DNA of 49,941 nt from Octopus sinensis (Eukaryota), in assembly GCF_006345805.1 (NCBI RefSeq), contig NW_021833923.1, forward strand, positions 1-49,941. Reading direction: 5' to 3'. The first letter of the stretch is position 1. Each line of letters opens with the position of its first letter. A model generated the notes under the pieces. The model was not told the DNA's origin and did no database searches. It was given only the letters and a program-made list of their open reading frames with translations. Shown here piece after piece: positions 1-27,266 of this stretch. Made by a program: the position numbers and the translations under genes.

Positions 1-183
1 CTAACCCTAAACCCTAACCCTAACCCTAACCCTAACCCAAACCTAACCCCTAACCCTAACCCAACCCCTACCCTTAAACCCTAACCCAACCCTAACCTTA
101 AACCTAACCCCAACCCTAACCCTAACCTAACCCCCTAACCTAACCCCACCTAACCCTAAACCAACCCCCTAACCCTAAACCCC
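1..183. repeat. Terminal telomeric repeat (CCCTAA)n (TTAGGG on minus strand), about 6 perfect units then degenerate
   Basis: Window opens with ctaaccctaaccctaaccc... and decays into variants such as cccaaa, cccctaa, ccttaa. C-rich strand faces the window start, as expected for a left chromosome end. Confidence 0.95.
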
Positions 184-1625
184 AATCGTAACGAATAACA
201 TGTAAGGGAAGTAACTCTGGATAATGTTCTACTCTCTAAGTTACTTCCCTTGAATCCTATAATTTAAAAATACATAACAGTAACTTAATTAGATTGAAGG
301 GAGGTAACTCTGAGATATTTTTTAAAATTATTTCCCTTTCTAGAGTTAGTTTACGGGCATGTTATTATTAATTATAATATGCAAGGTAAGTAACTCTACG
401 AAGGAAGACAACTCCTAAATCTTCGAGAGTTACTTCCCTCACATCTAATTAAATTACTATTATATATTATTAAATTATAATATTCAAGGGGAATAACTCT
501 AGAAAGGGAGATAACTAACCCTAACCCAAGCCCTAACCTTAAATCCTAACCCCAACCTTATCCCTAAACCTAACCCCCTAACCCTAAACCAAAATCGTAA
601 CGTAATAACATGTAAGGGAAGTAACTCTGGGTAATGTTCTACCTCTCTAGAGTTACTTCCCTTGAATCTTATAAATTAAAAATTCATAGCAGTAACTAAT
701 TAGATTGAAGGGAGGAAACTCTGGGATATTTTTCTTTAATTATTTCCCTTTCTAGAGTTACTCCCCTGGCATATAATTATTAATTGTAATATGCAAGGTA
801 AGTAACTCTACGAAGGAAGACAACTCCTAAATCTTCGAGAGTTTTTTCCCTCACATCTAATTAAATTACCATTATGTATTATTAAATTGTAATATTCAAG
901 GGGAATAACTCAAGAAAGGGAGATAACTAACCCTAACCTAACCCCTAACCTTAAATCCTAACCCCAACCTTATCCCTAAACCTAACCCCCTAACCCTAAA
1001 CCCGAATCGTAACGTAATAACATGTAAGGGAAGTAACTCTGGATAATGTTCTACCTTTCTAGAGTTACTTCCCTTGAATCTTATAATTTAAAAATACATA
1101 ACAGTAACTTAATTAGATTGGACGGAGGTAACTCTGGGATATGTTTTAAAATTATTTCCCTTTCTAGAGTTACTCTAATGGCATATTATTATTAATTATA
1201 ATATGCAAGGTAAGTAACTCTACGAAGGAAGACAACTCCTAAATCATCGAGAGTTACTTCCGTCACATCTAATTAAATTACTATTATGTATTATTAAATT
1301 ATAATATTCAAGGGGAATAACTCTAGAAAGGGAGATAACTAACCCTAACCGAAGCCCTAACCTTAAATCCTAACCCCAACCTTATCCGTAAACCTAACCC
1401 CCTAACCCTAAGCCTAAATCGTAACGTAAATAACATGTAAGGGAAGTAACTCTGGATAATGTTCTACCTTTCTAGAGTTACTTCCCTTGAATCTTATAAT
1501 TTAAAAATACATAACAGTAACTTAATTAGATTAAAGGGAGGTAACTCTGGGATATTTTTTTAATTATTTCCCTTTCTAGAGTTACTCCCCTGGCATATTT
1601 TAATATTCAAGGGGAATAACTCTGG
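184..1625. repeat. Subtelomeric tandem repeat, ~410-bp unit, ~3.5 copies, each with internal inverted motifs and a ~75-bp telomere-like tract
   Basis: aatcgtaacg recurs with its first t at 186, 595, 1007 and 1419 (periods 409, 412, 412). Telomere-like tracts at ~515-590, ~927-1003 and ~1339-1415. Confidence 0.93.
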
Positions 1626-1734
1626 GAAGGAAGAAAACTAAAAAATCTTCAAATGTTACCTCCCTTACATTTAGTTTAAAATGTATTTTGGAAGCTAATT
1701 ACCTCTACACTATAATGCTTACTCTTTTCGTTGT

Positions 1735-1905
1735 TTTGTCATTTCACTGTGCCGATCCTGGGGCACAGCCTTTTCTAGAGCAAATCGACACGAAGACTTA
1801 TCTACGTCAGTGTAGTATTAATTCTATTGGTCTTCTTTTCCCGAATGGATAAGTTAATGGAGTGTTAAAAACACCTGCATTGGTTGTCAAGCGGTTTTGG
1901 TGACA
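1735..1905 (+). mobile_element. Degenerate copy of an abundant dispersed repeat (probable SINE)
   Basis: catttcactgtgccgatcctggggcacagcc...gcaaatcgac...ttggttgtcaagcgg aligns by eye with copies at 37930-38130 and 38430-38625, and is followed by a CA/TA tract. Family assignment is from recall of octopus repeats, not a search. Confidence 0.65.
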
Positions 1906-1964
1906 CCGAAACATACACACATATACATATATATAAATATCTTTATGTATATACATGTTTGTCG

Positions 1965-3075
1965 CTCCCAACACAAAATTGCAGACATAACCTTCACAGC
2001 CACTGACATCGTAGCAGCAATAAATGAGGTCAAATACTACTCTGCCGTATTGTACGTCAGTCTCCTGATGGAAAGTAAACACCAACTTGCTGTCCGACTG
2101 ACCAACCTATGGAGAAATTCATTAGATGCAGGTTATATACCAGAACAGTTTCTATCCCAGTCAGTCATCCCGGTTTTCAAACAGGGAAACAGGTCCCTCG
2201 CACTCAACTATCGCCCAATCTCACTCACCTCCCACATCATCAAAGTGTTTGAAAGTGTGTTAAGATCAAGTATGGCTGACTTCCTGGAGACCCAGAAACT
2301 ACTAGATGCAAATCAGCATGGCTTTCGCTGTGGCAGGGACTGTCTAAAACAGCTCTTACACCAAATTGAAGATGTACTCAAAGCCTTGGGAACAGGTTCG
2401 AACTCTGATGTCATATATCTTGACTTCAGTAAAGCATTCGACAGGGTAAACCATACTACCCTACTCTCAAAATTGGCAAATGTTGGAATCCGTGGAAAAG
2501 TTCTACACTGGATCAAGAATTTTCTGGCGAATACAACACATGTTGTAGTTGATGGAATCCATTCCAGCCCAGCAAAAGTCACCAGCGATGTCCCCCAGCG
2601 GACTCTCTTGGGTCCGCTACTCTTCGTAATCTACATAAACGACCAGTGTCATACATTACTGCAAAGTGAAAATATTTGCTGATGACAAGCTCCGACAAAT
2701 AATCAATGAAGAAGCAGACCGAACTCAACTCCAGTCTGATGTATATGCTGTGAGTCAATGGGCAAACAAAAAATGCAACTAAACGACGGAAAATTTGAGC
2801 TGATGCATTCTGGAAGAAACTCCTCAAAAAACAGCTATACTCTCTTCCTTAAGGGGAACCGCTCACACAGATTCTAACAATATCAGAGATCTGGGTGTAA
2901 TTGTTGATGACGCTCTCACTTGAAATGCACACAATATAGGTCGATATAGGTCGTAGGATGAGTTCCTGGATATTAAGAACTCTCCGGTCCAGAGAACAAG
3001 GTGTCATCATACCACTTTTTTCCTCCTTTGTACGGCCATTACTCGAATACTGCTGCTTATCATATTCAATGAGAA
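1965..3075 (+). pseudogene. Non-LTR retrotransposon reverse transcriptase fragment (CR1/L2-like), frameshifted
   Basis: ORF 1897-2682 contains NYRPISLTSHIIKVFE, NQHGFR, DVIYLDFSKAFDRV and VPQ.TLLGPLLFVIYIND. After a frameshift near 2645 it continues KVKIFADD...QWA and later FVRPLLEYC. The ORF N-terminus is SINE/microsatellite read-through. Confidence 0.9.
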
Positions 3076-3660: not shown

Positions 3661-3679
3661 ACAAAATTCATGTTGTTTG

Positions 3680-5450
3680 ACATTTTTCAACCTGAAAACT
3701 TTTGCGATTCTAGTGATCTCTTGGATACATATATGCTTGTTATTAATCAGTTAACTTATATTTAACCAAGAAATCACTAAATTTCTTTGTTGTTTATGCA
3801 ATATTTTGACATTTTCTAAACTAAAAACTTTTATAAGCTTATTAACAATCAGTTAATTTTGCTGAGATCACTAAATATTTTGTTGATTTTCAAGTACACA
3901 TATTTTGATATTTTCTAACCTAAAAACTTTTGAGATTTTAGGAAACTCATGGATAAATAAAAGCTTTTTATCAATCACTTAACTTATATTTAGCTGAGTT
4001 CACTAAATTTTTTGTTGTCTTTCAAGTATACATATGCAATATTTTGAAATTTTAGAACCTATATACATTTAAGACTTTAGTGATCCCTTGGATAAATATA
4101 AGCTTTTTATCAATCAGTTAACTTATATTTAGCTAAAAGATCATAAAATTTTTTGTTGATTTTCAAGTACACATGCAATATTTTCACATTTTACAACCTG
4201 AAAACTTCTGCGATTTTAGTGATCACTTGAGTAAATAAAAGCTTTTTATCAATCAGTTAACTTATATTTAGCTAAGAGTTCATTAAATTTTTTGTTGTCT
4301 TTCAAGTATACATATGCAATATTTTAAAATTTTAGAACCTATATACATTTAAGACTTTAGTGATCCCTTGGATAAATATAAGCTTTTTATCAATCAGTTA
4401 ACTTATATTTAGCTAAAAGATCATAAAATTTTTTGTTGTTTTTCAATTACACATGCAATATTTTGACATTTTACAACCTGAAAACATGCGATTTTAGTGA
4501 TCACTTAAGTAAATAAAAGCTTTTTATCAATCACTTAACTTATATTTAGCTGAGTTCACTAAATTTTTTGTTGTCTTTCAAGTATACATATGCAATATTT
4601 TGAAATTTTAGAACCTATATACATTTAAGACTTTAGTGATCCCTTGGATAAATATAAGCTTTTTATCAATTTTTTGTTGTTTTTCAATTACACATGCAAT
4701 ATTTTGACATTTTACAACCTGAAAACATGCGATTTTAGTGATCACTTAAGTAAATAAAAGCTTTTTATCAATCACTTAACTTATATTTAGCTAAGAGTTC
4801 ACTAAATTTTTTGTTGTCTTTCAAGTATACATATGCAATATTTTGAAATTTTAGAACCTATATACATTTAAGACTTTAGTGATCCCTTGGATAAATATAA
4901 GCTTTTTATCAATCAGTTAACTTATATTTAGCTAAAAGATCATAAAATTTTTTGTTGTTTTTCAATTACACATGCAATATTTTGACATTTTACAACCTGA
5001 AAACATGCGATTTTAGTGATCACTTAAGTAAATAAAAGCTTTTTATCAATCACTTAACTTATATTTAGCTAAGAGTTCACTAAATTTTTTGTTGTCTTTC
5101 AAGTACACATATGCAATATTTTGACATTTTACAACTTATATACTATATACATATGCAATATTTTGACATTTTATAACGTGAAAACTGTTGCGATTTTAGT
5201 GATCTCTTATATAAATATAAGTTTTTGATGAATCACTTAACATATTTAGCAAAGAGATTACTTAGTTTTTTATTGTTCTTCAAGTACACATATGCAATAT
5301 TTTAACATTTGATAACCTGGAAACATTGCGATTTTAGTGATCTCTTCGATAAATATAAGCTTCTTATCAATCATTTAACTTATACTTGGCTAAGACATCA
5401 CTAATTTTTTGTTGTTTTTTAAGTACACATATGCAATATTTTGACATTGT
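3680..5450. repeat. AT-rich satellite, ~140-bp monomer arranged as an A/B dimer (~280 bp)
   Basis: ataaatataagc at 4092, 4372, 4648 and 4891 (last interval shortened by a deletion near 4670), alternating with a gtaaataaaagc monomer. Shared core ttatcaatca(g/c)ttaacttatatttagct. Confidence 0.9.
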
Positions 5451-5454
5451 CAAC

Positions 5455-8400
5455 TAGGCTTGTATGGAGGCATGATGTTTGAACGAGGCCTCTTTCCATA
5501 GACGCATGATGTGTGAACGAGGCATGTTTGTATGGACGCATGATGTGTGAAGGTGGCATGATGTATAGACGCTTAATGTGTGAACGAGGCATGTTTGTAT
5601 GGAGGCATGATGTTTGAACGAGGCTGTTTGTATAGATGCATGATGTGTGAACGATGTTCGTTTGTATGGACGCATGATGTGTGATCAAGGCTTCTTTGTA
5701 TGGATGCATGTTGTTTGAACGCGGAATGTTTGTACAGACGGATAATGTGTGAACGAGGTTTATTTCTTTGGACGCATGATGGTTTAAACAAGTATAAACG
5801 CATGATTTGTGGACGAGGCTTGTTTGTATAAACGCATGATGGGTTAACGTTTCTTGTTTCTATGGACGCATGAATCGTTCACAGATCATGCGGCCATACA
5901 AACAAGCCTCGTTCACACATCATGCGTTCATACAAAGTAGCCTCGTTCACAAATCATGCGTGAATACAAACATACCTCGTTCACACATCATACAAACAGG
6001 CCTCGTTCACACATGAAGCGTTCATACAAACATGCCTCGTTCACAGATTATGCGTCCATACAAACAAGCCTCATTCACACATCATGTGTGCAAGCAAACA
6101 TGTCTCGTTCACACATCAATTGTCCATACAAACATACCTCGTTCACAAATTATGCGTCTGTAGAAACAAGCCTCGCTCACCCATCATGCGTGCATAGAAA
6201 TAAGCCCCGTTAATTTATGATGTGAGACGCATGACGTTTGGACGGGGCATATTTGTATGGACGCATGATGTGTGAACGAGGCTTGTTTCTATGGCGGCAT
6301 GATGTGTGTATGTGACTTGTCTCTATGGACGCATCATGGTATAAACAAGTATAAACTAGTATGGACGCATGATGTGTGAACGAGGCATATATGTTTGGAC
6401 GCATGATATGAGAAGGAGGCATGTTTGTATAAACGCATGATGTGTGAACGAGACTACTTTGTATAAACGCATGATTTGAGAACCAGGCTTGTTTGTATGG
6501 AAGCATGATTTGTGAACGAGGTTTGTTTGTATGGACGCATGATGGGTGAACGAGGCTTGTTTCTACAGATGCATGAACCGTTCACAAATCATGCGTCCAT
6601 ACAAACAAGCCTCGTTCACACATCGAGCATCGATACAAACATGCCTCGTCCATACATCATGCGTGCAAACAAACAGTCCTCGTTCACACATCAAGCGTCC
6701 ATACAAACATGCCTCGTTCACACATTATGCATCCATACAAAGAAGCCTCGCTCACCCATCATGCGTGCATACAAACAAGCCTTGTTCACACATCATGCGT
6801 CCATACAAACAGGCCTCGTTCACACATCAAGCGTTCATACAAACATGCTACGTTCACAGATTATGCGTCCATACAAACAAGCCTCATTCACACATCATGT
6901 GTGCAAGCAAACATGCCTCGCTCACCCATCATGCGTGCATAGAAACAAGCCTCGTTAATTTATGATATGTCACACATGACGTTTGGACGGGGCATATTTG
7001 TATGGACGCATGATGTGTGAACGAGGCTTGTTTCTATGGCGGCATGATGTGTGTACGTGACTTGTCTCTATGGACGCATCATGGTATAAACAAATATAAA
7101 CTAGTATGGACGCATGATGTGTGAACGAGGCATATTTGTTTGGACGCATGATATGAGAAGGGGGCAGTTTTGTATAAACGCATGATTTGAGAACCAAGCA
7201 TGTTTGTATGGAAGCATGATTTGTGAACGAGGTTTGTTTGTATGGACGCATGATGGGTGAACGAGGCTTGTTTCTACGGATGCATGAACCGTTCACAAAT
7301 CATGCGTCCATATAGATAAGCCTCGTTCACACATCATGCGTCCATACAAACAAGGCCCGTTCACACTTCATGCGTCCATACAAACAGGCCTCGTTAACAC
7401 ATCGAGCATCGATACGAACATGCCTCGTCCATACATCATGCGTGCAAACAAACAGGCCTCGTTCACACATCAAGCGTCCATACAAACATGCCTCGTTCAC
7501 ACATTATGCGTCCATACAAAGAAGCCTCGCTCACCCATCATGCATGCATACAAACAAGCATCGTTAATCCATGGTATGTGAATGAGGCATGTTTGTATGA
7601 ACGAGGCTTGTTTGTATGGACGCAAGATGTGTGAACGAGGTTTGTTTGTATGGATGCTTGTATGAATAAAGCCTCATTCACTCATCATGTGTGCAAGCAA
7701 ACATGCCTCGTTCACACATCAATTGTCCATACAAACATACCTCGTTCACAAATTATGCGTCTGTAGAAACAAGCCTCGCTCACCCATCATGCGTGCATAG
7801 AAACAAGCCTCGTTAATTTATGATGTGTGACGCATGACGTTTGGACGGGGCATATTTGTATGGACGCATGATGTGTGAACGAGGCTTGTTTCTATGGCGG
7901 CATGATGTGTGTACGTGACTTGTCTTTATGGACGCATCATGGTATAAACAAGTATAAACTAGTATGGACGTATGATGTGTGAACGCGGCATATTTGTTTG
8001 GACGCATGATATGAGAAGGAGGCAGGTTTGTATAAACGCATGATGTGTGAACGAGACTACTTTGTATGGACGCATGATTTGAGAACCAGGCTTGTTTGTA
8101 TGGAAGCATGATTTGTGAACGAGGTTTGTTAGTATGGACGCATGATGGGTGAACGAGGCTTGTTTCTACGGATGCATGAACCGTTCACAAATCATGCGTC
8201 CATACAGATAAGCCTCGTTCACACATCATGCGTCCATACAAACAAGGCCCGTTCACACATCATGCGTCCATACAAACAAGCCTCGTTCACACATCGAGCA
8301 TCGATACAAACATGCCTCGTCCATACATCATGCGTGCAAACAAACAGGCCTCGTTCACACATAAAGCGTCCATACAAACATGCCTCGTTCACACATTATG

Positions 8401-10030
8401 CGTCCATACAAAGAAGCCTCGCTCACCCATCATGCGTGCATACAAACAAGCATCGTTAATCCATGGTATGTGAACAAGGCATGTTTGTATGAACGAGGCT
8501 TGTTTGTATGGACGCAAGATGTGTGAACGAGGCTTCTTTGTATGGATGCTTGTATGAATAAATCTTGTTTGTATGGACGCATGATTTGTGAACGAGGCTA
8601 ATTTGTTATGAGGCATGATTTGAGAACGAGGCTTGTTTTTATGGACGCATGATTTGTGGACGAGGCTTGTTTGTATGGACGCATGAATCGTTCACAGATC
8701 ATGCGGCCATACAAACAAGCCTCGTTCACACATCATGCGTTCATACAAAGAAGCCTCGTTCATAAATCATGCGTGAATACAAACAGGCCTCGTTCACACA
8801 TCAAGCGTTCATACAAACATGCCTCGTTCACACATCATGTGTGCAAGCAAACATGCCTCGTTCACACATCAATTGTCGATACAAACATACCTCGTTCACA
8901 CATTATGCGCCTGTAGAAACAAGCCTCGCTCACCCATCATGCGTGCATAGAAACAAGCCTCGTCAATTTATGACGTGTGACGCATGACGTTTGGACGGGG
9001 CATATTTGTATGGACGCATGATGTGTGAACGAGGCTTGTTTCTATGGAGGCATGATGTGTGTACGAGGCATGTTTGTTTGCACGCATGATGTATGCACGA
9101 GGCATGTTTGTATCGATGCTCGATGTGTGAACGAGGCTTGTTTGTATGGACGCATGATGTGTGAACGGGCCTTGTTTGTATGGACGCATGATGTGTGAAC
9201 GAGGCTTGTCTGTATGGACGCATGATTTCTGAACGGTTCATGCATCCGTAGAAACAAGCCTCGTTCACCCATCATGCGTCCATACAAAGAAACCTCGTTC
9301 ACAAATCATGCTTCCATACAAACAAGCCTGGTTCTCAAATCATGCGTCCATACAAAGTAGTCTTGTTCACACATCATGCGTTTATACAAACCTGCCTCCT
9401 TCTCATATCATGCGTCCATACAAACATGCCTCTTTCACAAATCATGCGTCCATACTAGTTTATACTTGTTTATACCATGATGCGTCCATAAACTAGTATG
9501 GACGCATGATTTGTGAAAGAGGCATGTTTGTATGGACGCATGATATGAGAAGGAGGCAGGTTTGTATAAACGCATGATGTGTGAACGAGACTACTTTGTA
9601 TGGACGCATGATTTGAGAACCAGGCTTGTTTGTATGGAAGCATGATTTGTGAACGAGGTTTCTTTGTATGGACGCATGATGGGTGAACGAGGCTTGTTTC
9701 TACGGATGCATGAACCGTTCACAAATCATGCGTCCATACAGACAAGCCTCGTTCACACATCATGCGTCCATACAAACAAGGCCCGTTCACACATCATGCG
9801 TCCATACAAACAAGCCTCGTTCACACATCGAGCATCGATACAAACATGCCTCGTCCATACATCATGCGTGCAAACAAACATGCCTCGTTCACACATTATG
9901 CGTCCATACAAACAAGCCTCACTCACCCATCATGCGTGCATACAAACAAGCATTGTTAATCCATGATATGTGAACGAGGCATGTTTGTATGAACGAGACT
10001 TGTTTGTATGGACGCATGATGTGTGAACGA
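5455..10030. repeat. 34-bp minisatellite, diverged, in about 14 blocks of alternating orientation
   Basis: Consensus CATCATGCGTCCATACAAACAAGCCTCGTTCACA and its reverse complement alternate. Switches near 5872, 6210, 6575, 6956, 7284, 7566, 7665, 7815, 8178, 8459, 8687, 8965, 9234, 9490, 9713 and 9960. Confidence 0.93.
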
Positions 10031-13000
10031 GGCGGTGCGACAGCATGGGCACAGTGAAATGAATTAGACAAATAGGTCGTTTATGTAAAATGTAAGGGAG
10101 TTAACATAGCTTCGGGCCAAATAAAGGAGACCGATGGAATAAATACTATGATTAGAAAGTCCTGGCGTCGATTTTCTTGAAAAAAGGCGGGGCTACAGCA
10201 TGGACACGTTATATGAATGAAACAAATAGCGTCGTTAACATAAGGGAGGTAACCCTAGAATATATTTAGTTTAGTTATAAATATGGGAGATAATTAAAAT
10301 AAATGTTTCCTAGAGTTACCTCCCTTACATTTTCCATCAGCCACACTATTTGTCTCATTTATTTGACTCCCCTATAAGGGAAAATAGATAACTTAATAAC
10401 CTGTAAAGGTAAGGGAGGTAACTCTAGAACTCTAGAAATGTAAGGGAGGTAACTCTATGTTCGTAGGAGATAACTGAAATAAATATTTTGTGGAGTTACC
10501 TCCCTTACATTTTACGTAAACGACTTAGTTGTCTAATTCATTTCACTGTGCCCATGCTGTCGCACCGCCTCTTCTCAAGCAAATCGACCCCAGGACTTAT
10601 TCTTTCCTAGCCTAGTACTTGCTCTATCGTTCACACGTCATGCGTCCATACAAACAAGCCTCGTTCACCCATCATGCGCCCAACGAGGCTTCTTTGTATG
10701 GACGCAGGACGTGTGAACTATAGAGCAAGTACTTGGCTGAGAAAGAATAAGTCCTAGACTCGATTTTCTTGAGAAGAGGCGGTGCGACAGCATGGGCACA
10801 GTCAAATGAATTAGACAAATAAGTTGTTTATGTAAAATGTAAGGGAGTTAACTCCAGAAAATATTTATTTCAGTTATCTCCTACGAACATAGAGTTACCT
10901 CCCTTACATTCCTAGAGTTACCTCCCTTACCTTTACAGGTTATTAAGTTAATTCTAGATATCTAGAAAGGTAAGGGAGGTAACTCTATGTTCGTAGGAGA
11001 TAAATGAAATAAATATTTTCTGGAGTTAACTCCCTTACATTTTACATAAACAACTTATTTTTCTCAGTCATTTGACTGTGCCCATGCTGTCGCACCGCCT
11101 CTTCTCAAGAAAATCGACTCTAGGACTTATTCTTTCTAAGCCTAGTACTTGCTCTATCGTTCACACGTCCTGCGTCCATACAAAGAAGCCTCTTTGGGCG
11201 CATGATGGGTGAACGAGGCTTGTTTGTATGGACGCATGACGTGTGAACTATAGAGCAAGTACTGGGCTAGGAAAGAATAAGTCCTGGGGTCGATTTGCTT
11301 GAGAAGAGGCGGTGCGACAGCATGGGCACAGTCAAATGAATTAGACAAATAAGTTGTTTATGTAAAATGTAAGGGAGTTAACTCCAGAAAATATTTATTT
11401 CAGTTATCTCCTACGACCATAGAGTTACCTCCCTTACATTCCTAGAGTTACCTCCCTTACCTTTACAGGTTATTAAGTTAATTCTAGATATCTAGAAAGG
11501 TAAGGGAGGTAACTCTATGTTCTTAGGAGATAAATGAAATAAATATTTTCTGGAGTTAACTCCCTTACATTTTACATAAACAACTTATTTTTCTCAGTCA
11601 TTTGACTGTGCCCATGCTGTCGCACCGCCTCTTCTCAAGAAAATCGACTCTAGGACTTATTCTTTCTAAGCCTAGTACTTGCTCTATCGTTCACACGTCC
11701 TGCGTCCATACAAAGAAGCCTCTTTGGGCGCATGATGGGTGAACGAGGCTTGTTTGTATGGACGCATGACGTGTGAACGATAGAGCAAGTACTGGGCTAG
11801 GAAAGAATAAGTCCTGGGGTCGATTTGCTTGAGAAGAGGCGGTGCGACAGCATGGGCACAGTCAAATGAATTAGACAAATAAGTTGTTTATGTAAAATGT
11901 AAGGGAGTTAACTCCAGAAAATATTTATTTCAGTTATCTCCTACGAACATAGAGTTACCTCCCTTACATTTCTAGAGTTCTAGTGTTACCTCCCTTACCT
12001 TTACAGGTTATTAAGTTATCATTTTTCTAGAGTTACTTCCCTTATAGGGGAGTCAAATAAATGAGACAAATAGTGTGGCTGATGGAAAATGTAAGGGAGG
12101 TAACTCTAGGAAACATTTATTTTAATTATCTCCCTTTATAACTAACCTAAATATATTCTAGGGTTACCTCCCTTATGTTAACGACGCTATTTGTTTCATT
12201 CATATAACGTGTCCATGCTGTAGCCCCGCCTTTTTTCAAGAAAATCGACGCCAGGACTTTCTAATCATAGTATTTATTCCATCGGTCTCCTTTCTTTGGC
12301 CCGAAGCTATGTTAACTCCCTTACATTTTACATAAACGACCTATTTGTCTAATTCATTTCACTGTGCCCATGCTGTCGCACCGCCTCGTTCACACATCAT
12401 GCGTCCATACAAACAAGCCTCGTTCACATGACGTGTGAACGAGACTTGTTTGTATGGACGCATGACGTGTAAATGCTCTGCTTAGAAAGAATGAGTCCCG
12501 GGGACTCATTTGCTTGAGAAAAGGTGCTACAGCATGGTCACAGTCAAATAAAGGAGACAAATAGCGTCGCTGATGTAAAATGTAAGGGAGGTAACTCTAG
12601 AACTCTAGAAATGTAAGGGAGGTAACTCTATGTTCGTAGGAGATAACTGAAATAAATATTTTGTGGAGTTACCTCCCTTACATTTTACGTAAACGACTTA
12701 TTTGTCTAATTCATTTCACTGTGCCCATGCTATCGCACCGCCTCTTCTCAAGCAAATCGACCCCAGGACTTATTCTTTCCTAGCCTAGTACTTGCTCTAT
12801 CGTTCACACGTCATGCGTCCATACAAACAAGCCTCGTTCACCCATCATGCGTCCATACAAACAAGCCTCGTTCACCCATCATGCGTCCAACGAGGCTTCT
12901 TTGTATGGACGCATGATGGGTGAACGAGTCTTGTTTGTGTGAACGCATGATGGGTGAACGAGGCTTGTTTGTATGGACGCATGACGTGTGAACGATAGAG

Positions 13001-16100: not shown

Positions 16101-19100
16101 GCCTAATTCACACATCATGCGTCCATATGGACAAGCCTCGTTCACACATCAAGCGTTCATACAAACAAGCCTCGTCCACACATCATGCGTCCATACAAAC
16201 AAGCCTGGATCACACATCATGCGTCCATATGTACAAGCCTCGTTCACACATCATGCGTCCATACAAACAAGCCTAATTCACACATCATGCGTCCATACAA
16301 ACAAGCCTAATTCACACATCATGCGTCCATATGGACAAGCCTCGTTCACACATCATGCGTTCATACAAACAAGCCTCGTTCACACATCATGCGTCCATAC
16401 AAACAAGCCTAATTCACACATCATGCGTCCATACAAACAAGCCTGGATCACACATCATGCGTCCATATGGACAAGCCTCGTTCACACATCATGCGTTCAT
16501 ACAAACAAGCCTAATTCACACATCATGCGTCCATACAAACAAGCCTCGTTCACACATCATGCGTCCATACAAACAAGCCTGTATCACACATCATGCGTCC
16601 ATACAAACAAGCCTCGTTCACACATCATGCGTCCATACAAACAAGCCTCGTTCACACATCATGCGTCCATACCAACAAGCCTAATTCACACATCATGCGT
16701 CCATACAAACAAGCCTCGTTCACACATCATGCGTCCATACAAACAAGCCTCGTTCACACATCATGCGTCCATACAAACAAGCCTAATTCACACATCATGC
16801 CTCCATACAAACAAGCCTCGTTCACACATCATGCGTCCATACAAACAAGCCTGGATCACACATCATGCGTCCATACAAACAAGCCTCGTTCACACATCAT
16901 GCGTCCATACAAACAAGCCTGGATCACACATCATGCGTCCATACAAAAAAGCCTCGTTCACACATCATGCGTCCATACAAACAAGCCTAATTCACACATT
17001 ATGCGTCCATACAAACAAGCCTGGATCACACATCATGCGTCCATACAAACAAGCCTCGTTCACACATCATGCGTCCATACAAACAAGCCTAATTCACACA
17101 TCATGCGTCCATACAAACAAGCCTAATTCACACATCATGCGTCCATACAAGCAAGCCTCGTTCACACATCATGCGTCCATACAAACAAGCCTAAGTCACA
17201 CATCATCCCCACATACCCCCCACACCCCCCCCCCCCCCACCCATGCGTCCATACAACAAGCCTGGATCACACATCATGCGTCCATACAAGCCTATTCACA
17301 CATCATGCGTCCATACAAACAACCTCGTTCACACATCAGGTCCATAAAAACAAGCCTATTCACACATCATGCGTCCATACAAACAAGCCTCGTTCACACA
17401 TCATGCGTCCATACAACAAGCCTAATTCACACATCATGCGTCCATACAAACAGCCTGGATCACACATCATGCGTCCATACAAACAAGCCTAATTCACACA
17501 TCATGCCTCCATACAAACAAGCCTCGTTCACACATCATGCGTCCATACAAACAAGCCTCGTTCACACATCATGCGTCCATACAAACAAGCCTAATTCACA
17601 CATCATGCGTCCATAAAAACAAGCCGGATCACACATCATGCGTCCATACAAACAAGCCTAATTCACACATCATGCGTCCATACAAACAAGCCTAATTCAC
17701 ACATCATGCGTCCATACAAAGAAGCCTAATTCACACATTATGCGTCCATACAAACAAGCCTCGTTCACACATCATGCGTCCATACAAACAAGCCTAATTC
17801 ATACGTCATGCGTCCATACAAACATGCCTCGTTCACACATCATGCGTCCATACAAACAAGCCTAATTCACATATCATGCGTCCATACAACAAGCCTCGTT
17901 CACACATCATGCGTCCATACAAACAAGCCTAATTCACACATCATGCGTCCATACAAACAAGCCTCGTTCACACATCATCATGCGTCCAATAAACAAGCCA
18001 CGTTCACACATCATGCTTCCATACAAACAAGCCTCGTTCACACATCATGCGTCCATACAAACAAGCCTCGTTCACACATCATGCGTCCATACAAACAAGC
18101 CTCGTTCACACATCATGCGTCCATACAAACAAGCCTCGTTCACATCATGCGTCCATACAAACAAGCCTCGTTCACACATCATGCGTCCATACAAACAAGC
18201 CTAATTCACACATCACGCGTCCATACAAACAAGCCTGGATCACACACATCATGCGTCCATATGGACAAGCCTTTTCACACATCATGCGTCCATACAAACA
18301 AGCCTGGATCACACATCATGCGTCCATACAAACAAGCCTAATTCACACATCATGCGTCCATACAAACAATCGTCGTTCACACACACACATGCGTCCATAC
18401 TAACAAGCCTCGTTCACACATCATGCGTCCATACAAACAAGCCTCGTTCACACATCATGCGTCCATACAAACAAGCCTCGTTCACACATCATGCGTCCAT
18501 ACAAACAAGCCTCGTTCACACATCATGCGTCCATACAAACAAGCCTAATTCACACATCATGCGTCCATACAAAGAAGCCTGGATCACACATCATGCGTCC
18601 ATATGGACAAGCCTCGTTCACACATCATGCGTCCATACAAACAAGCCTGGATCACACATCATGCGTCCATACAAACAAGCCTAATTCACACATCATGCGT
18701 CCATACAAACAAGCCTCGTTCACACATCATGCGTCCATACAAACAAGCCTAATTCACACATCATGCGTCCATACAAACAAGCCTGGATCACACATCAAGC
18801 GTCCATATTGACAAGCCTCGATCACACATCATGCGTCCATACAAACAAGCCTGGATCACACATCATGCGTCCATACAAACAACACTAATTCACACATCAT
18901 GCGTCCATACAAACAAGTCTCGTTCAGACATCATGCGTCCATACAAACAAGCCTAATTCACACATCATGCGTCCATACAAACAAGCCTCGTTCACACATC
19001 ATGCGTCCATACAAACTAGCCTAATTCACACAACATGCGTCCATACAAACAAGCCTGGATCACACATCATGCGTCCATATGGACAAGCCTCGTTCACACA

Positions 19101-22100
19101 TCATGCGTCCATACAAACAAGCGTGGATCACACATCATGCGTCCATACAAACAAGCCTAATTCACACATCATGCGTCCATACAAACAAGCCTCGTTCACA
19201 CATGCGTCCATACAAACAAGCCTAATTCACACATCATGCGTCCATACAAACAAGCCTCGTTCACACATCATGCGTCCACAAACAAGCCTAATCACACATC
19301 ATGCGTCCATACAAACAAGCCTCGTTCACACATCATGCGTCCATACAAACAAGCCTAATTCACACATCATGCGTCCATACAAACAAGCCTAATTCACACA
19401 TCATGCGTCCATACAAACAAGCCTGGATCACACATCATGCGTCCATATGGACAAGCCTCGTTCACACATCATGCGTCCATACAAACAAGCCTGGATCACA
19501 CATCATGCGTCCATACAAACAAGTCTAATTCACACATCATGCGTCCATACAAACAAGCCTGGATCACACATCATGCGTCCATATGGACAAGCCTCGTTCA
19601 CACATCATGCGTCCATACAAACAAGCCTGGATCACACATCATGCGTCCATATGGATAAGCCTCGTTCACACATCATGCGTCCATACAAACAAGCCTAATT
19701 CACACATCATGCGTCCATACAAACAAACCTAATTCACACATCATGCGTCCATACAAACAAGCCTCGTTCACACATCATGCGTCCATACAAACAAGCCTAA
19801 TTCACACATCATGCGTCCATACAAACAAGCCTGGATCACACATCATGCGTCCATACAAACAAGACTCGTTCACACATCATGCGTCCATACAAACAAGCCT
19901 CGTTCACACATCATGCGTCCATACAAACAAGCCTAATTCACACATCATGCGTCCATACAGACAAACCTGGATAACACATCATGCGTCCATATGGACAAGC
20001 CTCGTTCACACATCATGCGTCCATACAAACAAGCCTGGATCACACATCATGCGTCCATATGGATAAGCCTAATTCACACATCATGCGTCCATACAAACAA
20101 GCCTCGTTCACACATCATGCGTCCATACAAACAAGCCTCGTTCACACATCATGCGTCCATACAAACAAGCCTTGATCACACATCATGCGTCCATATGGAC
20201 AAGTCTCGTTCACACATCATGCGTCCATACAAACAAGCCTGGATCACACATCATGCGTCCATACAAACAAGCCTAATTCACACATCATGCGTCCATACAA
20301 ACAAGCCTAATTCACACATCATGCGTCCATACAAACAAGCCTTGATCACACATCATGCGTCCATACAAACAAGCCTCGTTCACACATCATGCGTCCATAC
20401 AAACAAGCCTAATTCACACATCATGCGTCCATACAAACAAGCCCGTTCACACATCATGCGTCCATACAAACAAGCCTAATTCACACATCATGCGTCCATA
20501 CAAACAAGCCTCGTTCACACATCATGCGTCCATACAAACAAGCCTAATTCACACATCATGCGTCCATACAAGCAAGCCTCGTTCACACATCATGCGTCCA
20601 TACAAACAAGCCTAATTCACACATCATGCGTCCATACAAACAAGCCTGGATCACACATCATGCGTCCATATGGACAAGCCTCGTTCACACATCATGCGTC
20701 CATACAAACAAGCCTAATTCACACATCATGCGTCCATACAAACAAGCCTAATTCACACATCATGCGTCCATACAAACAAGCCTCGTTCACACATCATGCG
20801 TCCATACAAACAAGCCTCGTTCACACATCATGCGTCCATACAAACAAGCCTAATTCACACATCATGCGTCCATACAAACAAGCCTCGTTCACACATCATG
20901 CGTCCATACAAACAAGCCTCGTTCACACATCATGCGTCCATACAAACAAGCCTAATTCACACATCATGCGTCCATACAAACAAGCCTGGATCACACATCA
21001 TGCGTCCATATGGACAAGCCTGGATCACACATCATGCGTCCATATGGACAAGCCTCGTTCACACATCATGCGTCCATACAAACAAGCCTCGTTCACACAT
21101 CATGCGTCCATACAAACAAGCCTAATTCACACATCATGCGTCCATACAAACAAGCCTCGTTCACACATCATGCGTCCATACAAACAAGCCTAATTCACAC
21201 ATCATGCGTCCATACAAACAAGCCTGGATCACACATCATGCGTCCATACAAACAAGCCTAATTCACACATCATGCCTCCATACAAACAAGCCTCGTTCAC
21301 ACATCATGCGTCCATACAAACAAGCCTCGTTCACACATCATGCGTCCATACAAACAAGCCTAATTCACACATCATGCGTCCATACAAACAAGCCTAATTC
21401 ACACATCATGCGTCCATACAAGCAAGCCTCGTTCACACATCATGCGTCCATACAAACAAGCCTAATTCACACATCATGCGTCCATACAAACAAGCCTCGT
21501 TCACACATCATGCGTCCATACAAACAAGCCTAATTCACACATCATGCGTCCATACAAACAAGCCTGGATCACACATCATGCGTCCATACAAACAAGCCTA
21601 ATTCACACATCATGCCTCCATACAAACAAGCCTCGTTCACACATCATGCGTCCATACAAACAACCCTCGTTCACACATCATGCGTCCATACAAACAAGCC
21701 TAATTCACACATCATGCGTCCATACAAACAAGCCTGGATCACACATCATGCGTCCATATGGACAAGCCTCGTTCACACATCATGCGTCCATACAAACAAG
21801 CCTGGATCACACATCATGCGTCCATACAAACAAGCCTAATTCACACATCATGCGTCCATACAAACAAGCCTAATTCACACATCATGCGTCCATACAAACA
21901 AGCCTGGATCACACATCATGCGTCCATACAAACAAGCCTCGTTCACACATCATGCGTCCATACAAACAAGCCTAATTCACACATCATGCGTCCATACAAA
22001 CAAGCCTCGTTCACACATCATGCGTCCATACAAACAAGCCTAATTCACACATCATGCGTCCATACAAACAAGCCTCGTTCACACATCATGCGTCCATACA

Positions 22101-25100
22101 AACAAGCCTAATTCACACATCATCCGTCCATACAAACAAGCCTCGTTCACACATCATGCGTCCATACAAACAAGCCTAATTCACACATCATGCGTCCATA
22201 CAAAGAAGCCTAATTCACACATCATGCGTCCATATGGACAAGCCTCGTTCACACATCATGCGTCTATACAAACAAGCCTGATCACACATCATGCGTCCAT
22301 ACAAACAAGCCATTCACACATCATGCGTCCATACAAACAAGCTAATCACACAATCTGCGTCCATACAAACAAGCCTGGATCACACATCATGCGCCCATAT
22401 GGACAAGCTTCGTTCACACATCATGCGTCCATACAAACAAGCCTGGATCACACATCATGCGTCCATACAAACAAGCCTAATTCACACATCATGCGTCCAT
22501 ACAAACAAGCCTCGTTCACACATCATGCGTCCATACAAACAAGCCTAATTCACACATCATGCGTCCATACAAACAAGCCTCGTTCACACATCATGCGTCC
22601 ATACAAACAAGCCTAATTCACACATCATGCGTCCATACAAACAAGCCTGGATCACACATCATGCGTCCATACAAACAAGCCTAATTCACACATCATGCGT
22701 CCATACAAACAAGCCTCGTTCACACATCATGCGTCCATACAAACAAGCCTAATTCACACATCATGCGTCCATACAAACAAGCCTAATTCACACATCATGC
22801 GTCCATACAAACAAGCCTCGTTCACACATCATGCGTCCATACAAACAAGCCTAATTCACACATCATGCGTCCATACAAACAAGCCTGGATCACACATCAT
22901 GCGTCCATATGGACAAGCCTCGTTCAGACATCATGCGTCCATACAAACAAGCCTGGATCACACATCATGCGTCCATACAAACAAGCCTAATTCACACATC
23001 ATGCGTCCATACAAACAAGCCTAATTCACACATTATGCGTCCATACAAACAAGCCTGGATCACACATCATGCGTCCATACAAACAAGCCTCGTTCACACA
23101 TCATGCGTCCATACAAACAAGCCTAATTCACACATCATGCGTCCATACAGGCAAGCCTCGTTCACACATCATGCGTCCATACAAACAAGCCTAATTCACA
23201 CATCATGCGTCCATACAAACAAGCCTGGATCACACATCATGCGTCCATACAAACAAGCCTAATTCACACATCATGCGTCCATACAAACAAGCCTCGTTCA
23301 CACATCATGCGTCCATACAAACAAGCCTAATTCACACATCGTGCGTCCATACAAACAAGCCTCGTTCACACATCATGCGTCCATACAAACAAGCCTAATT
23401 CACACATCATGCGTCCATACAAACAAGCCTGGATCACACATCATGCGTCCATACAAACAAGACTAATTCACACATCATGCCTCCATACAAACAAGCCTCG
23501 TTCACTCATCATGCGTCCATACAAACAAGCCTCGTTCACACATCATGCGTCCATACAAACAAGCCTAATTCACACATCCTGCGTCCATAGAAACAAGCCT
23601 GGATCACACATCATGCGTCCATACAAACAAGCCTAATTCACACATCATGCGTCCATACAAACAAGCCTAATTCACACATCATGCGTCCATACAAACAAGC
23701 CTGGATCACACATCATGCGTCCATACAAACAAGCCTCGTTCACACATCATGCGTCCATACAAACAAGCCTAATTCATACATCATGCGTCCATACTAACAA
23801 GCCTCGTTCACACATCATGCGTCCATACAAACAAGCCTAATTCACATATCAGCGTCCAGTCCATACAAACAAGCCTCGTTCACACATCATGCGTCCATAC
23901 AAACAAGCCTAATTCACACATCATGCGTCCATACAAACAAGCCTCGTTCACACATCATGCGTCCATACAAACAAGCCTAATTCACACATCATGCGTCCAT
24001 ACAAACAAGCCTGGATCACACATCATGCGTCCATATGGACAAGCCTCGTTCACACATCATGCGTCCATACAAACAAGCCTGGATCACACATCATGCGTCA
24101 TACAAAAACAAGCTAATTCACACATCATGCGTCCATACAAACAAGCCTAATTCACACATCATGCGTCCATACAAACAAGCCTGGATCACACATCATGCGT
24201 CCATACAAACAAGCCTCGTTCACACATCATGCGTCCATACAAACAAGCCTAATTCACACATCATGCGTCCATACAAACAAGCCTCGTTCACACATCATGC
24301 GTCCATACAAACAAGCCTAATTCACATATCATGCGTCCATACAAACAAGCCTGGATCACACATCATGCGTCCATACAAACAAGCCTAATTCACACATCAT
24401 GCGTCCATACAAACAAGCCTCGTTCACACATGATGCGTCCATACAAACAAGCCTAATTCACACATCATGCGTCCATACAAACAAGCCTCGTTCACACATG
24501 ATGCGTCCATACAAACAAGCCTAATTCACACATGATGCGTCCATACAAACAAGCCTCGTTCACACATCATGCGTCCATACAAACAAGCCTAATTCACACA
24601 TCATGCGTCCATACAATCAAGCCTCGTTCACACATCATGCGTCCATACAAACAAGCCTAATTCACACATCATGCGTCCATACAAACAAGCCTGGATCACA
24701 CATCATGCGTCCATACAAACAAGCCTAATTCACACATCATGCGTCCATACAAACAAGCCTCGTTCACACATCATGCGTCCATACAAACAAGCCTCGTTCA
24801 CACATCATGCGTCCATACAAACAAGCCTAATTCACACATCATGCGTCCATACAAACAAGCCTAATTCACACATCATGCGTCCATATGGACAAGCCTCGTT
24901 CACACATCATGCGTCCATACAAACAAGCCTGGATCACACATCATGCGTCCATACAAACAAGCCTGGATCACACATCATGCGTCCATACAAACAAGCCTAA
25001 TTCACACATCATGCGTCCATACAAACAAGCCTAATTCACACATCATGCGTCCATACAAACAGCCTAATTCACACATCATGCGTCCATACAAACAAGCCTA

Positions 25101-26790
25101 ATTCACACATCATGCGTCGATACAAACAAGCCTAATTCACACATCATGCGTCCATACAAACAAGCCTGGATCACACATCATGCGTCCATACAAACAAGCC
25201 TCGTTCACACATCATGCGTCCATACAAACAAGCCTAATTCACACATCATGCGTCCATACAAACAAGCCTCGTTCACACATCATGCGTCCATACAAACAAG
25301 CCTAATTCACATATCATGCGTCCATACAAACAAGCCTCGTTCACACATCATGCGTCCATACAAACAATCCTAATTCACACATCATGCGTCCATACACACA
25401 AGCCTCGTTCACACATCATGCGTCCATACAAACAAGCCTAATTCACACATCATGCGTCCATACAAACAAGCCTGGATCACACATCATGCGTCCATATGGA
25501 CAAGCCTCGTTCACACATCATGCGTCCATACAAACAAGCCTGGATCACACATCATGCGTCCATACAAACAAGCCTAATTCACACATCATGCGTCCATACA
25601 ATCAAGCCTAATTCACACATCATGCGTCCATACAAACAAGCCTGGATCACACATCATGCGTCCATACAAACAAGCCTCGTTCACACATCATGCGTCCATA
25701 CAAACAAGCCTAATTCACACATCATGCGTCCATCCAAACAAGCCTCGTTCACACATCATGCGTCCATACAAACAAGCCTCGTTCACACATCAAACGTCAT
25801 ACAAACAAGCCTCGCTCACACATCAAACGTCCATACAAACAAGCCTCGCTCACATATCATGCGTCTATACAAACAAGCCTCGTTCACACATCAAACGTCC
25901 ATACAAACAAGCCTCGCTCACACATCAAACGTCCATACAAACAAGCCTCGCTCACATATCATGCGTTTATACAAACAAGCCTCGTTCACACATCAAACGT
26001 CCATACAAACAAGCCTAATTCACATATCATGCGTCCATACAAACAAGCCTCGTTCACACATCATGCGTCTATACAAACAAGCCTCGTTCACACATCAAAC
26101 GTCCATACAAACAAGCCTCGCTCACATATCATGCGTCTATACAAACAAGCCTCGTTCACACATCAAACGTCCATACAAACAAGCCTCGTTCACACATCAT
26201 GCGTCTATACAAACAAGCCGCGTTCACACATCAAACGTCCATACAAACAAGCCTCGTTTACACATCATGCGTCTATACAAACAAGCCTCGTTCACACATC
26301 ATGCGTCCATACAAACAAGCCTCGTTCACACATCATGCGTCCATACAAACAAGCCTCGTTCACACATCATGCGTCAATACAAACAAGCCTCGTTCACACA
26401 TCATGCGTCCATACAAACAAGCCTCGTTCACACATCATGCGTCCATACAAACAAGCCTTGTTCACGCATCATGCGTCCATACAAAAAAGCCTCGTTCACA
26501 CATCATGCGTCCATACAAACAAGCCTCGTTCACACATCATGCGTCCATACAAACAAGCCTCGTTCACACATCATGCGTCCATACAAACAAGCCTCGATCA
26601 CACATCATGCGTCCATACAAACAAGCCTCGATCACACATCATGCGTCCATACAAACAAGCCTTGTTCACACATCATGCGTCCATACAAACAAGCCTCGAT
26701 CACACATCATGCGTCCATAGAAACAAGCCTCGATCACACATCATGCGTCCATAGAAACAAGCCTCGATCACACATCATGCGTCCATACAC
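13141..26790 (+). repeat. Main 34-bp minisatellite array, ~400 monomers, single orientation
   Basis: Continuous CATCATGCGTCCATACAAACAAGCCT[CGTT/AATT/GGAT/CGAT]CACA; 13650 bp / 34 is about 400 monomers. No unique spacers. Confidence 0.97.
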
Positions 26791-26792
26791 AC

Positions 26793-27266
26793 AACCCTAA
26801 CCCTAACCCTTAACCTAACCCTAACCCTAACCCTAATCTTTAACCCGAACCCTAAAACTTACCCTAACCCTAAACCTAACCCGATCCCTAACCCTAATCC
26901 TAACCATAACCCTAACCCTAAACCTAAACCTAACACTAACCCTAACCCTAGCCATTACCCTTAACCCTAACCCTAACCCTTAAACCTAACCCTAACTCTT
27001 AACCTAACCCTAACCCTTAACCCGATCCCTACCCCTAACCCTAACCCCAACCCTAACCCTTAACCCTTAACCCTAACCCCTAACCCCTAACCCCTAACCC
27101 TAACCCCTTAACCCTTACCCCAACCCTAACCCTAACCCTAACCCAAACCCTAACCCTTAACCCTAACCCTTAACCCTAAACCCCTAACCCTAACCTTAAA
27201 ACCTAGCCCTAAACCTAACCCCTTAACCCTAATCCCAACCCTAACCCTAACCCAAACCCTAACCCC
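26793..27266. repeat. Internal telomeric tract (CCCTAA)n, degenerate, same orientation as the terminal tract
   Basis: About 470 bp of ccctaa and variants starting right after the last 34-mer (...gcgtccatacacac|aaccctaaccc) and ending at ...cctaacccc|tcttattatt. Confidence 0.95.

What the first reader, a model, noticed from the sequence alone, without database searches (positions are those of the whole stretch)
1..27266. A ~27-kb subtelomeric block bracketed by two same-orientation telomeric tracts (Y-prime-like, potentially excisable cap)
Seen: (CCCTAA)n at 1-183 and again at 26793-27266 on the same strand. Everything between them is satellite, fold-back DNA or a LINE relic, sharply different from the TE/microsatellite landscape after 27267. 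Established: yeast Y-prime elements are flanked by direct telomeric tracts and can move between ends or loop out as circles. Inference: the internal tract is a former chromosome end later capped by a mobile satellite block. Recombination between the tracts would release a ~27-kb circle and leave a ready-made telomere.
Basis: partly seen in the sequence, partly recalled or inferred. Interest (0 to 1): 0.8.

Follow-up and report, generated by a model that had tools for sequence, protein, structure and literature searches.

The report
Satellite chromosome-end block beyond old telomere tract
The first 27 kb of this window are a satellite-rich chromosome-end domain lying outside a decayed internal stretch of telomere repeats, a layout already known from yeast, humans and green algae, and nothing here shows that it is a mobile or excisable element.

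Summary
Degenerate (CCCTAA)n lies at 1-183 and 26793-27265 on the same strand. The DNA between is 81% tandem repeat, against 11% after 27266.

Four qualifications:
- Both tracts are equally decayed, about 88-89% identical to perfect repeats. Longest perfect runs are 29 and 23 bp, and their longest shared exact match is 28 bp.
- Only about 1-100 is extra terminal repeat. Positions 101-183 are the telomere-like segment that every 412-bp satellite unit carries, so five same-orientation tracts exist, not two.
- The internal tract cuts off the first ~117 codons of a small GIY-YIG-type ORF relic. Its relatives show no reverse transcriptase, so the 'PLE' label is unconfirmed.
- A low-quality patch at 17171-18352, with a poly-C junk run, sits inside the 13.6-kb 34-bp array that links the two halves.

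Best reading: an ordinary subtelomeric satellite domain distal to an old healed break. This matches the degenerate subtelomeric telomere tracts of yeast and human and the telomere-seeded Sultan/Suber repeats of Chlamydomonas.

The 'former chromosome end' idea is plausible. The Y-prime-like, mobile, excisable reading is unsupported: there are no ORFs, recombination homology is poor, and copies at other ends could not be searched. Interest is low.

The parts
1..100 (+). Outermost telomeric repeats (C-rich strand). They are 89% identical to perfect (CCCTAA)n, and the longest perfect run is 29 bp at 10-38. They replace the AT-rich tail that precedes the telomere-like segment in the other 412-bp units.
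101..183 (+). Telomere-like segment belonging to the first 412-bp satellite unit. It runs on from the outer repeats without a break.
   Evidence: alignment A1
139..1599 (+). 412-bp satellite, 3.6 copies, 92% matches. Each unit is a ~78-bp degenerate telomere-like segment (515-592, 927-999, 1339-1417) plus hairpins built on the motif TAAGGGAGGTAACTCT.
1720..1959 (+). SINE-like module, 69% identical to a dispersed copy at 38420-38669.
2000..3060 (+). Frameshifted LINE-type reverse-transcriptase relic. The longest ORF is 1897-2682, and its best named relative is an Octopus sinensis protein at 59% identity.
3856..5455 (.). 139-bp AT-rich satellite with 280- and 320-bp higher-order periods.
5460..10014 (.). 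34-bp satellite in blocks of about 220-410 bp that alternate in orientation (fold-back array).
10015..13141 (.). Nested near-perfect palindromes (96-99% complementary). They are built from SINE-like modules, TAAGGGAGGTAACTCT hairpins and short 34-mer runs.
13142..26798 (+). 34-bp satellite, 402 copies in a single orientation, C-rich on the + strand like the telomere C-strand. The last ~1.3 kb next to the internal tract carries private variants.
17171..18352 (.). Low-quality or possible join patch inside the 34-bp array. It holds 14 of the array's 23 spacings that are not a multiple of 34 bp, plus a C-rich junk insert at 17203-17243 that contains the only C or G run of 8 or more in the window.
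26793..27265 (+). Internal degenerate telomeric tract, 473 bp, about 76 units of which 25 are perfect. It is 87-91% identical to perfect repeats along its whole length with no purity gradient.
27269..27740 (+). 5'-truncated, stop- and frameshift-bearing relic of a small GIY-YIG-type protein. It aligns to residues 118-264 of a 277-aa relative, and about 117 N-terminal codons are missing at the tract boundary.

Best explanation
Window 1-27266 is a subtelomere-type satellite domain, and the 473-bp tract at 26793-27265 is an old, decayed subtelomeric interstitial telomeric sequence (ITS). It marks the boundary between that distal domain and ordinary transposon- and microsatellite-rich chromosome.

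Most likely history (all steps inferred):
1. A break inside a GIY-YIG-type element was healed by de novo telomere addition, giving the proximal junction at 27265/27266.
2. That telomere was later internalised when a satellite-bearing chromosome tip was joined to it or copied onto it. This could be end joining or break-induced replication from a sister or another end. The distal junction is ...CATACACACAA|CCCTAACCC, with only 2-3 nt of possible microhomology.
3. The tract then decayed by mutation.
4. The distal domain evolved by ordinary satellite dynamics. The 34-bp array, the fold-back arrays and the 412-bp satellite all derive from one SINE-associated fold-back element family.
5. The 412-bp unit captured an already decayed telomere-like segment and was then amplified.
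6. The outermost repeats run straight into the telomere-like segment of the first unit. This suggests these segments act as seeds for telomere re-addition after terminal loss.

The block is not an autonomous element.
For: Shown:
- All five telomere-like tracts have the same orientation, and there is no G-strand copy.
- The landscape changes sharply at the tract: 81% vs 11% tandem repeat. A 16-nt motif occurs 37 times, only inside the block, against 0.01 expected.
- The ORF relic abutting the tract lacks its first ~117 codons, and nothing related lies on the distal side.
- The tract is uniformly decayed (87-91% to perfect, 25 of ~76 units perfect). About 12 units carry base substitutions, so it is not a live telomere.
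- The array edge next to the tract carries private monomer variants, as natural array edges do.
- The telomere-like segments of the 412-bp units are 89-95% identical to each other but only 82-85% to perfect repeats. They therefore decayed before they were amplified.
- The outer repeats pass seamlessly into the first unit's segment.

From the literature:
- Chlamydomonas Sultan and Suber subtelomeric repeats each carry a telomere-like sequence, about 80 bp in Suber. It is proposed to seed telomere healing and passes seamlessly into the telomere (PMC8287924).
Against: - No second chromosome end, no reads and no other individual could be examined, so every historical step is inference.
- The outer tract (89% to perfect) is no purer than the internal one. 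The window alone therefore does not prove that position 1 is near a live telomere.
- A low-quality patch at 17171-18352 lies inside the homogeneous array that physically links the two halves.
- Homopolymer-length variants dominate in both tracts. Part of the apparent decay could be long-read consensus error.
Confidence: 0.55

Rival explanations
1. First reader's model. The 27-kb block is a Y-prime-like mobile subtelomeric cassette that spreads between ends. It can loop out as a circle by recombination between its flanking telomeric tracts, leaving a functional telomere.
For: - Direct telomeric tracts flank the block.
- Block-specific sequence families are absent from the proximal 22.7 kb.
- Y-prime circles and Y-prime spread are documented in yeast (PMC11042809).
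Against: - There is no helicase or any other credible ORF. The long ORFs are frame artefacts of a 34-bp repeat and have no homologues.
- The block is a heterogeneous mosaic of four repeat types plus TE relics, not a conserved unit.
- The longest exact match between the tracts is 28 bp, and both are only about 88-89% telomere-like.
- No second copy could be found, although the searchable collections do not include this genome.
Confidence: 0.1
2. Assembly artefact. The contig joins two different loci. The join would be either inside the 34-bp array or at the satellite/telomere junction, for example through a chimeric read extending a true chromosome end. Part of the degeneracy would then be consensus noise.
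For: - The patch at 17171-18352 holds 14 of the array's 23 off-period spacings, plus a junk C-rich insert containing the only C or G run of 8 or more in the window.
- The outer tract has 13% indels.
- Homopolymer-length variants dominate both tracts.
Against: - Two true ends cannot overlap in the same orientation.
- The internal tract is degenerate from its first repeat, with about 12 substitution-type units and no stretch of pure repeat, unlike a live telomere tip.
- Monomer variant types a, b and c are mixed in the same way on both sides of the patch.
- Palindrome arms nearby match at 96-99% without gaps, so the local consensus there is good.
- Even if the patch were a misjoin, at least 8.4 kb of satellite would still lie distal to the tract.
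Confidence: 0.17
3. The internal tract was never a chromosome end. Telomerase or repair inserted the repeats at an internal break, or a short telomere-like segment of a satellite unit expanded by slippage, next to a naturally 5'-truncated element.
For: - Telomere-like segments are demonstrably part of a satellite unit in this same block.
- 5' truncation is common for retroelement copies.
- Short ITSs from repair are known (PMC6410037).
Against: - The flanks of the tract share nothing with the flanks of the 412-bp unit's segment.
- The two sides of the tract are unrelated sequence domains rather than two halves of one interrupted sequence.
- Relatives of the ORF show no reverse transcriptase, so retroelement-style truncation is not established.
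Confidence: 0.13

Closest known systems
Subtelomeric interstitial telomeric sequences that separate distal and proximal subtelomere domains (human and yeast)
   Same: A block of degenerate telomere-like repeats, in the same orientation as the terminal repeats, sits at a boundary between a distal repeat-rich domain and a proximal domain (PMC6410037; window).
   Different: Here the distal domain is almost wholly tandem satellite and fold-back DNA, not segmental duplications or X/Y-prime elements. The organism is probably a cephalopod, a group for which I found no description of subtelomere structure.
Chlamydomonas reinhardtii Sultan and Suber subtelomeric repeat arrays
   Same: Each unit of a tandem subtelomeric repeat carries a telomere-like segment, about 80 bp of degenerate repeats in Suber. 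The unit nearest the end passes seamlessly into the telomere, and these segments are proposed to seed telomere healing (PMC8287924). The 412-bp unit here behaves the same way.
   Different: The sequences are unrelated and only 3.6 units are present here. Here the block also contains much larger unrelated arrays and a long internal tract at its proximal edge. In the Sultan arrays the proximal edge is a Spacer sequence.
Saccharomyces cerevisiae Y-prime elements
   Same: Subtelomeric DNA lies between the terminal telomere and an internal telomeric tract. In yeast this arrangement allows loss, spread and circle formation (PMC11042809).
   Different: Y-prime is a conserved 5.2/6.7-kb unit with two large ORFs (helicase), an ARS consensus and a STAR element, with about 2% divergence between copies. 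None of these features is present or testable here.
Foldback (FB)-type elements, whose long inverted arms are made of short tandem repeats (from my own knowledge of Drosophila FB elements)
   Same: 5460-13141 consists of inverted arms made of 34-bp tandem repeats around SINE-like and hairpin-motif cores.
   Different: No transposase, defined termini or target-site duplications were identified. Relatedness to FB elements was not tested.

Membership tests
Y-prime element (S. cerevisiae type) | Telomeric repeat tracts on both sides | tested here: met
   Tracts at 1-183 and 26793-27265 lie on the same strand.
Y-prime element (S. cerevisiae type) | Two large ORFs, including a helicase | tested here: not met
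   The only ORFs of 90 aa or more in 1-27266 are a broken RT relic and satellite-frame artefacts. A satellite ORF has no homologue. The feature list is from PMC11042809.
Y-prime element (S. cerevisiae type) | A conserved unit of defined length present at many chromosome ends | not testable with these tools
   The source genome is not in any searchable collection.
Y-prime element (S. cerevisiae type) | Replication origin (ARS) and extrachromosomal circles | not testable with these tools
   This needs experiments or read data.
Subtelomeric ITS at a distal/proximal domain boundary | Degenerate telomere-like repeats in the same orientation as the terminal repeats | tested here: met
   The tract is 473 bp and 87-91% identical to perfect repeats, with 25 of ~76 units perfect.
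Subtelomeric ITS at a distal/proximal domain boundary | Separates two domains of different composition | tested here: met
   Tandem-repeat coverage is 81% vs 11%. The block-specific motif is absent from the proximal side.
Subtelomeric ITS at a distal/proximal domain boundary | Lies within tens of kb of a real chromosome end | tested here: inconclusive
   The window starts in about 100 bp of telomeric repeats whose purity rises toward position 1: 70% of bases in perfect hexamers in 1-60 against 39% in 61-183. Whether position 1 is a contig or chromosome end is unknown.
Telomere-seeded subtelomeric tandem repeat (Sultan/Suber-like) | Every repeat unit carries a telomere-like segment | tested here: met
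   Segments at 101-183, 515-592, 927-999 and 1339-1417.
Telomere-seeded subtelomeric tandem repeat (Sultan/Suber-like) | The outermost unit passes seamlessly into the telomeric tract | tested here: met
   Alignment A1 shows the outer repeats replacing the unit's AT-rich tail and continuing into its telomere-like segment.
Telomere-seeded subtelomeric tandem repeat (Sultan/Suber-like) | Sequence homology to Sultan or Suber | not tested
   None is expected between an alga and a metazoan. The claim is analogy only.
   The relic itself has no Pfam hit. Three relatives hit PF01541 below the curated cut-off, at 18-20 bits against 22.6. The motif pattern is visible in the alignment.
   None of the 10 relatives scanned, of 276-1411 aa, has an RVT domain. 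The closest are about 277-aa proteins ending in the nuclease-like domain.

The most novel reading that the evidence does not exclude
The block, or its 412-bp telomere-seeded satellite plus the 34-bp array, is a cassette shared by many chromosome ends of this probable cephalopod. It would be exchanged between ends and occasionally released as circles by recombination between telomeric tracts. That would make it a non-coding functional analogue of Y-prime that provides back-up telomere seeds.
Probability: 0.1. Interest if true: 0.55.

Novelty: new member of a known kind. Interest (0 to 1): 0.25.

Why it matters
If the assembly is correct, this is a clean example of the widespread subtelomere plan in a group, probably cephalopods, whose chromosome ends are poorly described. 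That plan is a distal repeat domain, a degenerate internal telomeric tract, then ordinary chromosome. The window also shows a satellite unit that has captured and amplified a telomere-like seed. This is useful for annotating and checking chromosome ends in that genome, but it opens no new question.

Tried and rejected
1. Finding the source record or other copies. Exact-product look-ups of two window ORFs found nothing. A protein search with a satellite ORF found nothing. The exact 23-mer of the 34-bp unit is absent from the metagenome, prokaryote-genome and viral collections. The 19-mer hairpin motif gave two metagenome contigs that match over the motif only, so these are chance hits.

2. Structured RNAs. 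Rfam at gathering thresholds and tRNA scans found nothing in the window, so no hammerhead or other known RNA is present.

3. Classifying the proximal ORF relic as a Penelope-like element. The word-index search found a single relative. The exhaustive search found 71 further proteins, mostly short. None of the 10 scanned has a reverse transcriptase, and GIY-YIG hits fall below Pfam's cut-off. The label was rejected as unproven.

4. Pinning down the species. The best RT hits come from anonymous ENA or TARA contigs. The only named hit is Octopus sinensis at 59% identity. The SINE sequences look cephalopod-like to me from memory, which is a lead and not a test.

5. A purity gradient along the internal tract, which would be expected if a once-pure distal telomere part survived. 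None was found.

6. Literature on cephalopod subtelomeres or internal telomeric tracts. Nothing relevant was found.
Full report
**Observation**

The window opens with degenerate C-strand telomeric repeats. Tandem Repeats Finder gives a period-6 array at 1-178 with 29.7 copies, 75% matches and 13% indels. A second array in the same orientation lies at 26793-27265, with 75.8 copies, 79% matches and 6% indels. No G-strand dimer occurs anywhere in the window.

Between the two tracts lie:
- a 412-bp satellite at 139-1599 (3.6 copies)
- a SINE-like module at 1720-1959
- a frameshifted reverse-transcriptase relic at about 2000-3060 (Pfam RVT_1, E 1e-18)
- a 139-bp satellite at 3856-5455
- 34-bp repeats in blocks of alternating orientation at 5460-10014
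- nested near-perfect palindromes at 10015-13141
- a 402-copy single-orientation 34-bp array at 13142-26798

Tandem repeats cover 81% of 1-27266 and 11% of the remainder.

**Qualifications to the observation**

1. Both tracts are heavily decayed. Only 49% and 48% of their bases lie in perfect CCCTAA hexamers. The longest perfect runs are 29 and 23 bp, and the longest exact match shared by the two tracts is 28 bp. Measured against perfect repeats, positions 1-100 are 89% identical. Four successive chunks of the internal tract are 87-91% identical, with no gradient. The 'terminal' tract is thus no purer than the internal one.

2. The first tract is composite. Alignment of the window start with the three following units shows that 101-183 corresponds to a ~78-bp telomere-like segment carried by every 412-bp unit (515-592, 927-999, 1339-1417). 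Only about 100 bp are additional repeats, and they replace the AT-rich tail of the unit. The block therefore carries five same-orientation telomere-like tracts, not two.

3. The unit-borne segments are 89-95% identical to one another but only 82-85% identical to perfect repeats. A telomere-like tract had already decayed when it was captured in the unit and amplified.

4. Whether position 1 is a contig or chromosome end cannot be determined from the window. The fraction of bases in perfect hexamers rises toward position 1, from 39% in 61-183 to 70% in 1-60. This is what the inner edge of a telomere would look like.

**The proximal junction**

Immediately after the internal tract, at 27269-27740 on the + strand, lies a relic ORF interrupted by stops and at least one frameshift.
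- It aligns at 48% identity (E 1e-46) with residues 118-264 of a 277-aa protein. It aligns at 33% identity with a 276-aa protein.
- About 117 N-terminal codons are therefore missing exactly where the telomeric tract begins.
- Nothing related to the relic lies distal to the tract.
- The family is rare in the databases. The word-index search gave one hit, and the exhaustive search gave 71 further proteins, mostly short.
- Three relatives touch Pfam GIY-YIG below the curated cut-off. None of the ten scanned has a reverse-transcriptase domain.
'Small GIY-YIG-type ORF relic' is what the data support.

**Origin of the block's repeats**

The 16-nt motif TAAGGGAGGTAACTCT, allowing up to 2 mismatches, occurs 37 times against 0.01 expected. 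All copies lie in 203-1667 and 10241-13130, in both orientations, forming hairpins. The palindromic composite also contains modules 72-76% identical to a dispersed SINE-like copy at 38420-38669, and short 34-mer runs begin directly at the ends of these modules.

The 412-bp satellite, the fold-back arrays and probably the 34-bp satellite thus derive from one SINE-associated fold-back element family. The block is a mosaic grown by satellite dynamics, not a single conserved unit.

**Assembly quality**

Spacing of a conserved 8-mer along the 34-bp array is a multiple of 34 at all but 23 places. Fourteen of those 23 cluster in 17171-18352, mostly as 1-bp deletions. The same patch holds a C-rich junk insert at 17203-17243, which contains the only C or G run of 8 or more in the window. 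This looks like thin or unpolished consensus, or a join, in the middle of the homogeneous array that links the two halves.

Several points argue against a gross artefact:
- Monomer variant types are mixed alike on both sides of the patch.
- The array's last ~1.3 kb next to the internal tract carries private variants, as natural array edges do.
- Nearby palindrome arms match at 96-99% without gaps.
- About 12 units of the internal tract carry base substitutions rather than homopolymer-length changes.
- Two true chromosome ends cannot overlap in the same orientation.
- Even a misjoin at the patch would leave at least 8.4 kb of satellite distal to the tract.

**Most likely explanation (confidence 0.55)**

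This is a subtelomere-type satellite domain lying distal to an old subtelomeric interstitial telomeric sequence. The historical steps are all inferred:
1. A break inside the GIY-YIG-type element was healed by telomere addition.
2. That telomere was internalised when a satellite-bearing tip was joined to it or copied onto it. The distal junction is ...CATACACACAA|CCCTAACCC.
3. The tract decayed.
4. The distal arrays expanded and were homogenised.
5. The telomere-like segments of the 412-bp units now provide the seamless transition into the terminal repeats, and plausibly act as seeds for re-healing after terminal loss.

**Comparison with what is known**

[quoted passage not shown] In Chlamydomonas, Sultan and Suber subtelomeric repeats each carry a telomere-like sequence, about 80 bp in Suber. 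This sequence passes seamlessly into the telomere and is proposed to prime telomere healing (PMC8287924). The present locus matches both patterns by analogy.

Y-prime elements share only the flanking telomeric tracts. They are conserved 5.2/6.7-kb units with two large ORFs including a helicase, an ARS consensus and a STAR element, and they form circles in type I survivors (PMC11042809). The ORF criterion was tested here and failed. Distribution over chromosome ends and circle formation could not be tested.

'Former chromosome end' is the most economical reading of the internal tract. 'Mobile, Y-prime-like' has no support. 'Excisable, leaving a ready-made telomere' is geometrically right but mechanistically weak, given 28 bp of maximal shared identity and about 88% telomere likeness.

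**Organism**

The only named relative of the RT relic is an Octopus sinensis protein, at 59% identity over 59% of the query. The other best hits come from anonymous marine or ENA contigs. The SINE-like sequences look cephalopod-like to me from memory. A cephalopod source is likely but not shown. From my own knowledge, TTAGGG is the expected telomere repeat for molluscs.

**Dead ends**

- The source record could not be found.
- A satellite ORF has no protein homologues.
- The satellite core has no DNA matches in the metagenome, prokaryote-genome or viral collections.
- The hairpin motif gave only chance matches.
- There are no Rfam families or tRNAs in the window.
- No literature on cephalopod subtelomeres was found.

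**Scores**

Interest is 0.25. Novelty is 'new member of a known kind'. The most novel reading not excluded is a non-coding cassette shared between ends that acts as a Y-prime analogue, with probability about 0.1 and interest 0.55 if true.

Noticed in passing
window 17171-18352 (junk insert at 17203-17243): A patch of clustered 1-bp indels inside an otherwise indel-free 34-bp array. It also holds a C-rich junk run that includes 14 consecutive C. It looks like unpolished single-read consensus or a join.
   Followed up: partly
window 203-1667 and 10241-13130: The 16-nt motif TAAGGGAGGTAACTCT occurs 37 times (allowing up to 2 mismatches) in both orientations and forms hairpins. It is shared by the 412-bp satellite and the palindromic composite and is absent from the rest of the window.
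   Followed up: partly
window 10015-13141; 1720-1959; 38420-38669: The palindromic composite and the spacer after the 412-bp satellite contain SINE-like modules, 69-76% identical to a dispersed copy in the proximal region. Short 34-mer runs start right at the ends of these modules, which suggests that the 34-bp satellite arose from this element.
   Followed up: partly
window 13142-26798: The large 34-bp array has a strong strand asymmetry (GC skew about -0.5 on the + strand). Its G-rich strand therefore has the same polarity as the telomeric G-strand. In the fold-back region both orientations occur.
   Followed up: no
window 25496-26798: The ~1.3 kb of 34-bp array nearest the internal telomeric tract lacks the common b and c monomer variants and carries private variants (TCGCT, TCGAT). 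This is typical of a poorly homogenised array edge.
   Followed up: partly
window 13329-26800: Dozens of ORFs of up to 805 aa are frame artefacts of the 34-bp repeat (3 x 34 = 102 nt, giving a 34-aa periodic peptide). A 211-aa example has no homologue among 5.8 billion proteins.
   Followed up: yes
window 9000-9951, 9990-12426, 10428-11449: Near-perfect palindromes with 96-99% complementary arms of 290-540 nt and spacers as short as 24-44 nt. Such structures are unstable in vivo and can also arise from fold-back chimeric long reads. Several different centres argue that the structure is real.
   Followed up: partly
window 28560-28800 and 29300-29830: Further transposon relics lie in the proximal flank. 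One is a LINE-type RT fragment (QFGF..GR motif, + strand). The other is a retroelement pol-like stretch with stops, whose antisense strand gives a spurious 186-aa ORF. Pfam found nothing for either.
   Followed up: partly
window 38698-39088, 44934-45143, 47149-47471, 48609-48967: A tandem pair of SINE-like copies separated by (CA)n, an (AC)105 microsatellite, and long (TA)n runs in a region that falls to 14-20% GC. This is the ordinary repeat landscape of the proximal part.
   Followed up: no
L001 (Logan SRR11869384 contig, 918 bp): This contig encodes the only relative found by the word-index search. It is 69% identical in DNA to window 27362-27735. Its called protein (P0001) is itself out of frame in its N-terminal half, so it too looks like a decayed copy.
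   Followed up: partly
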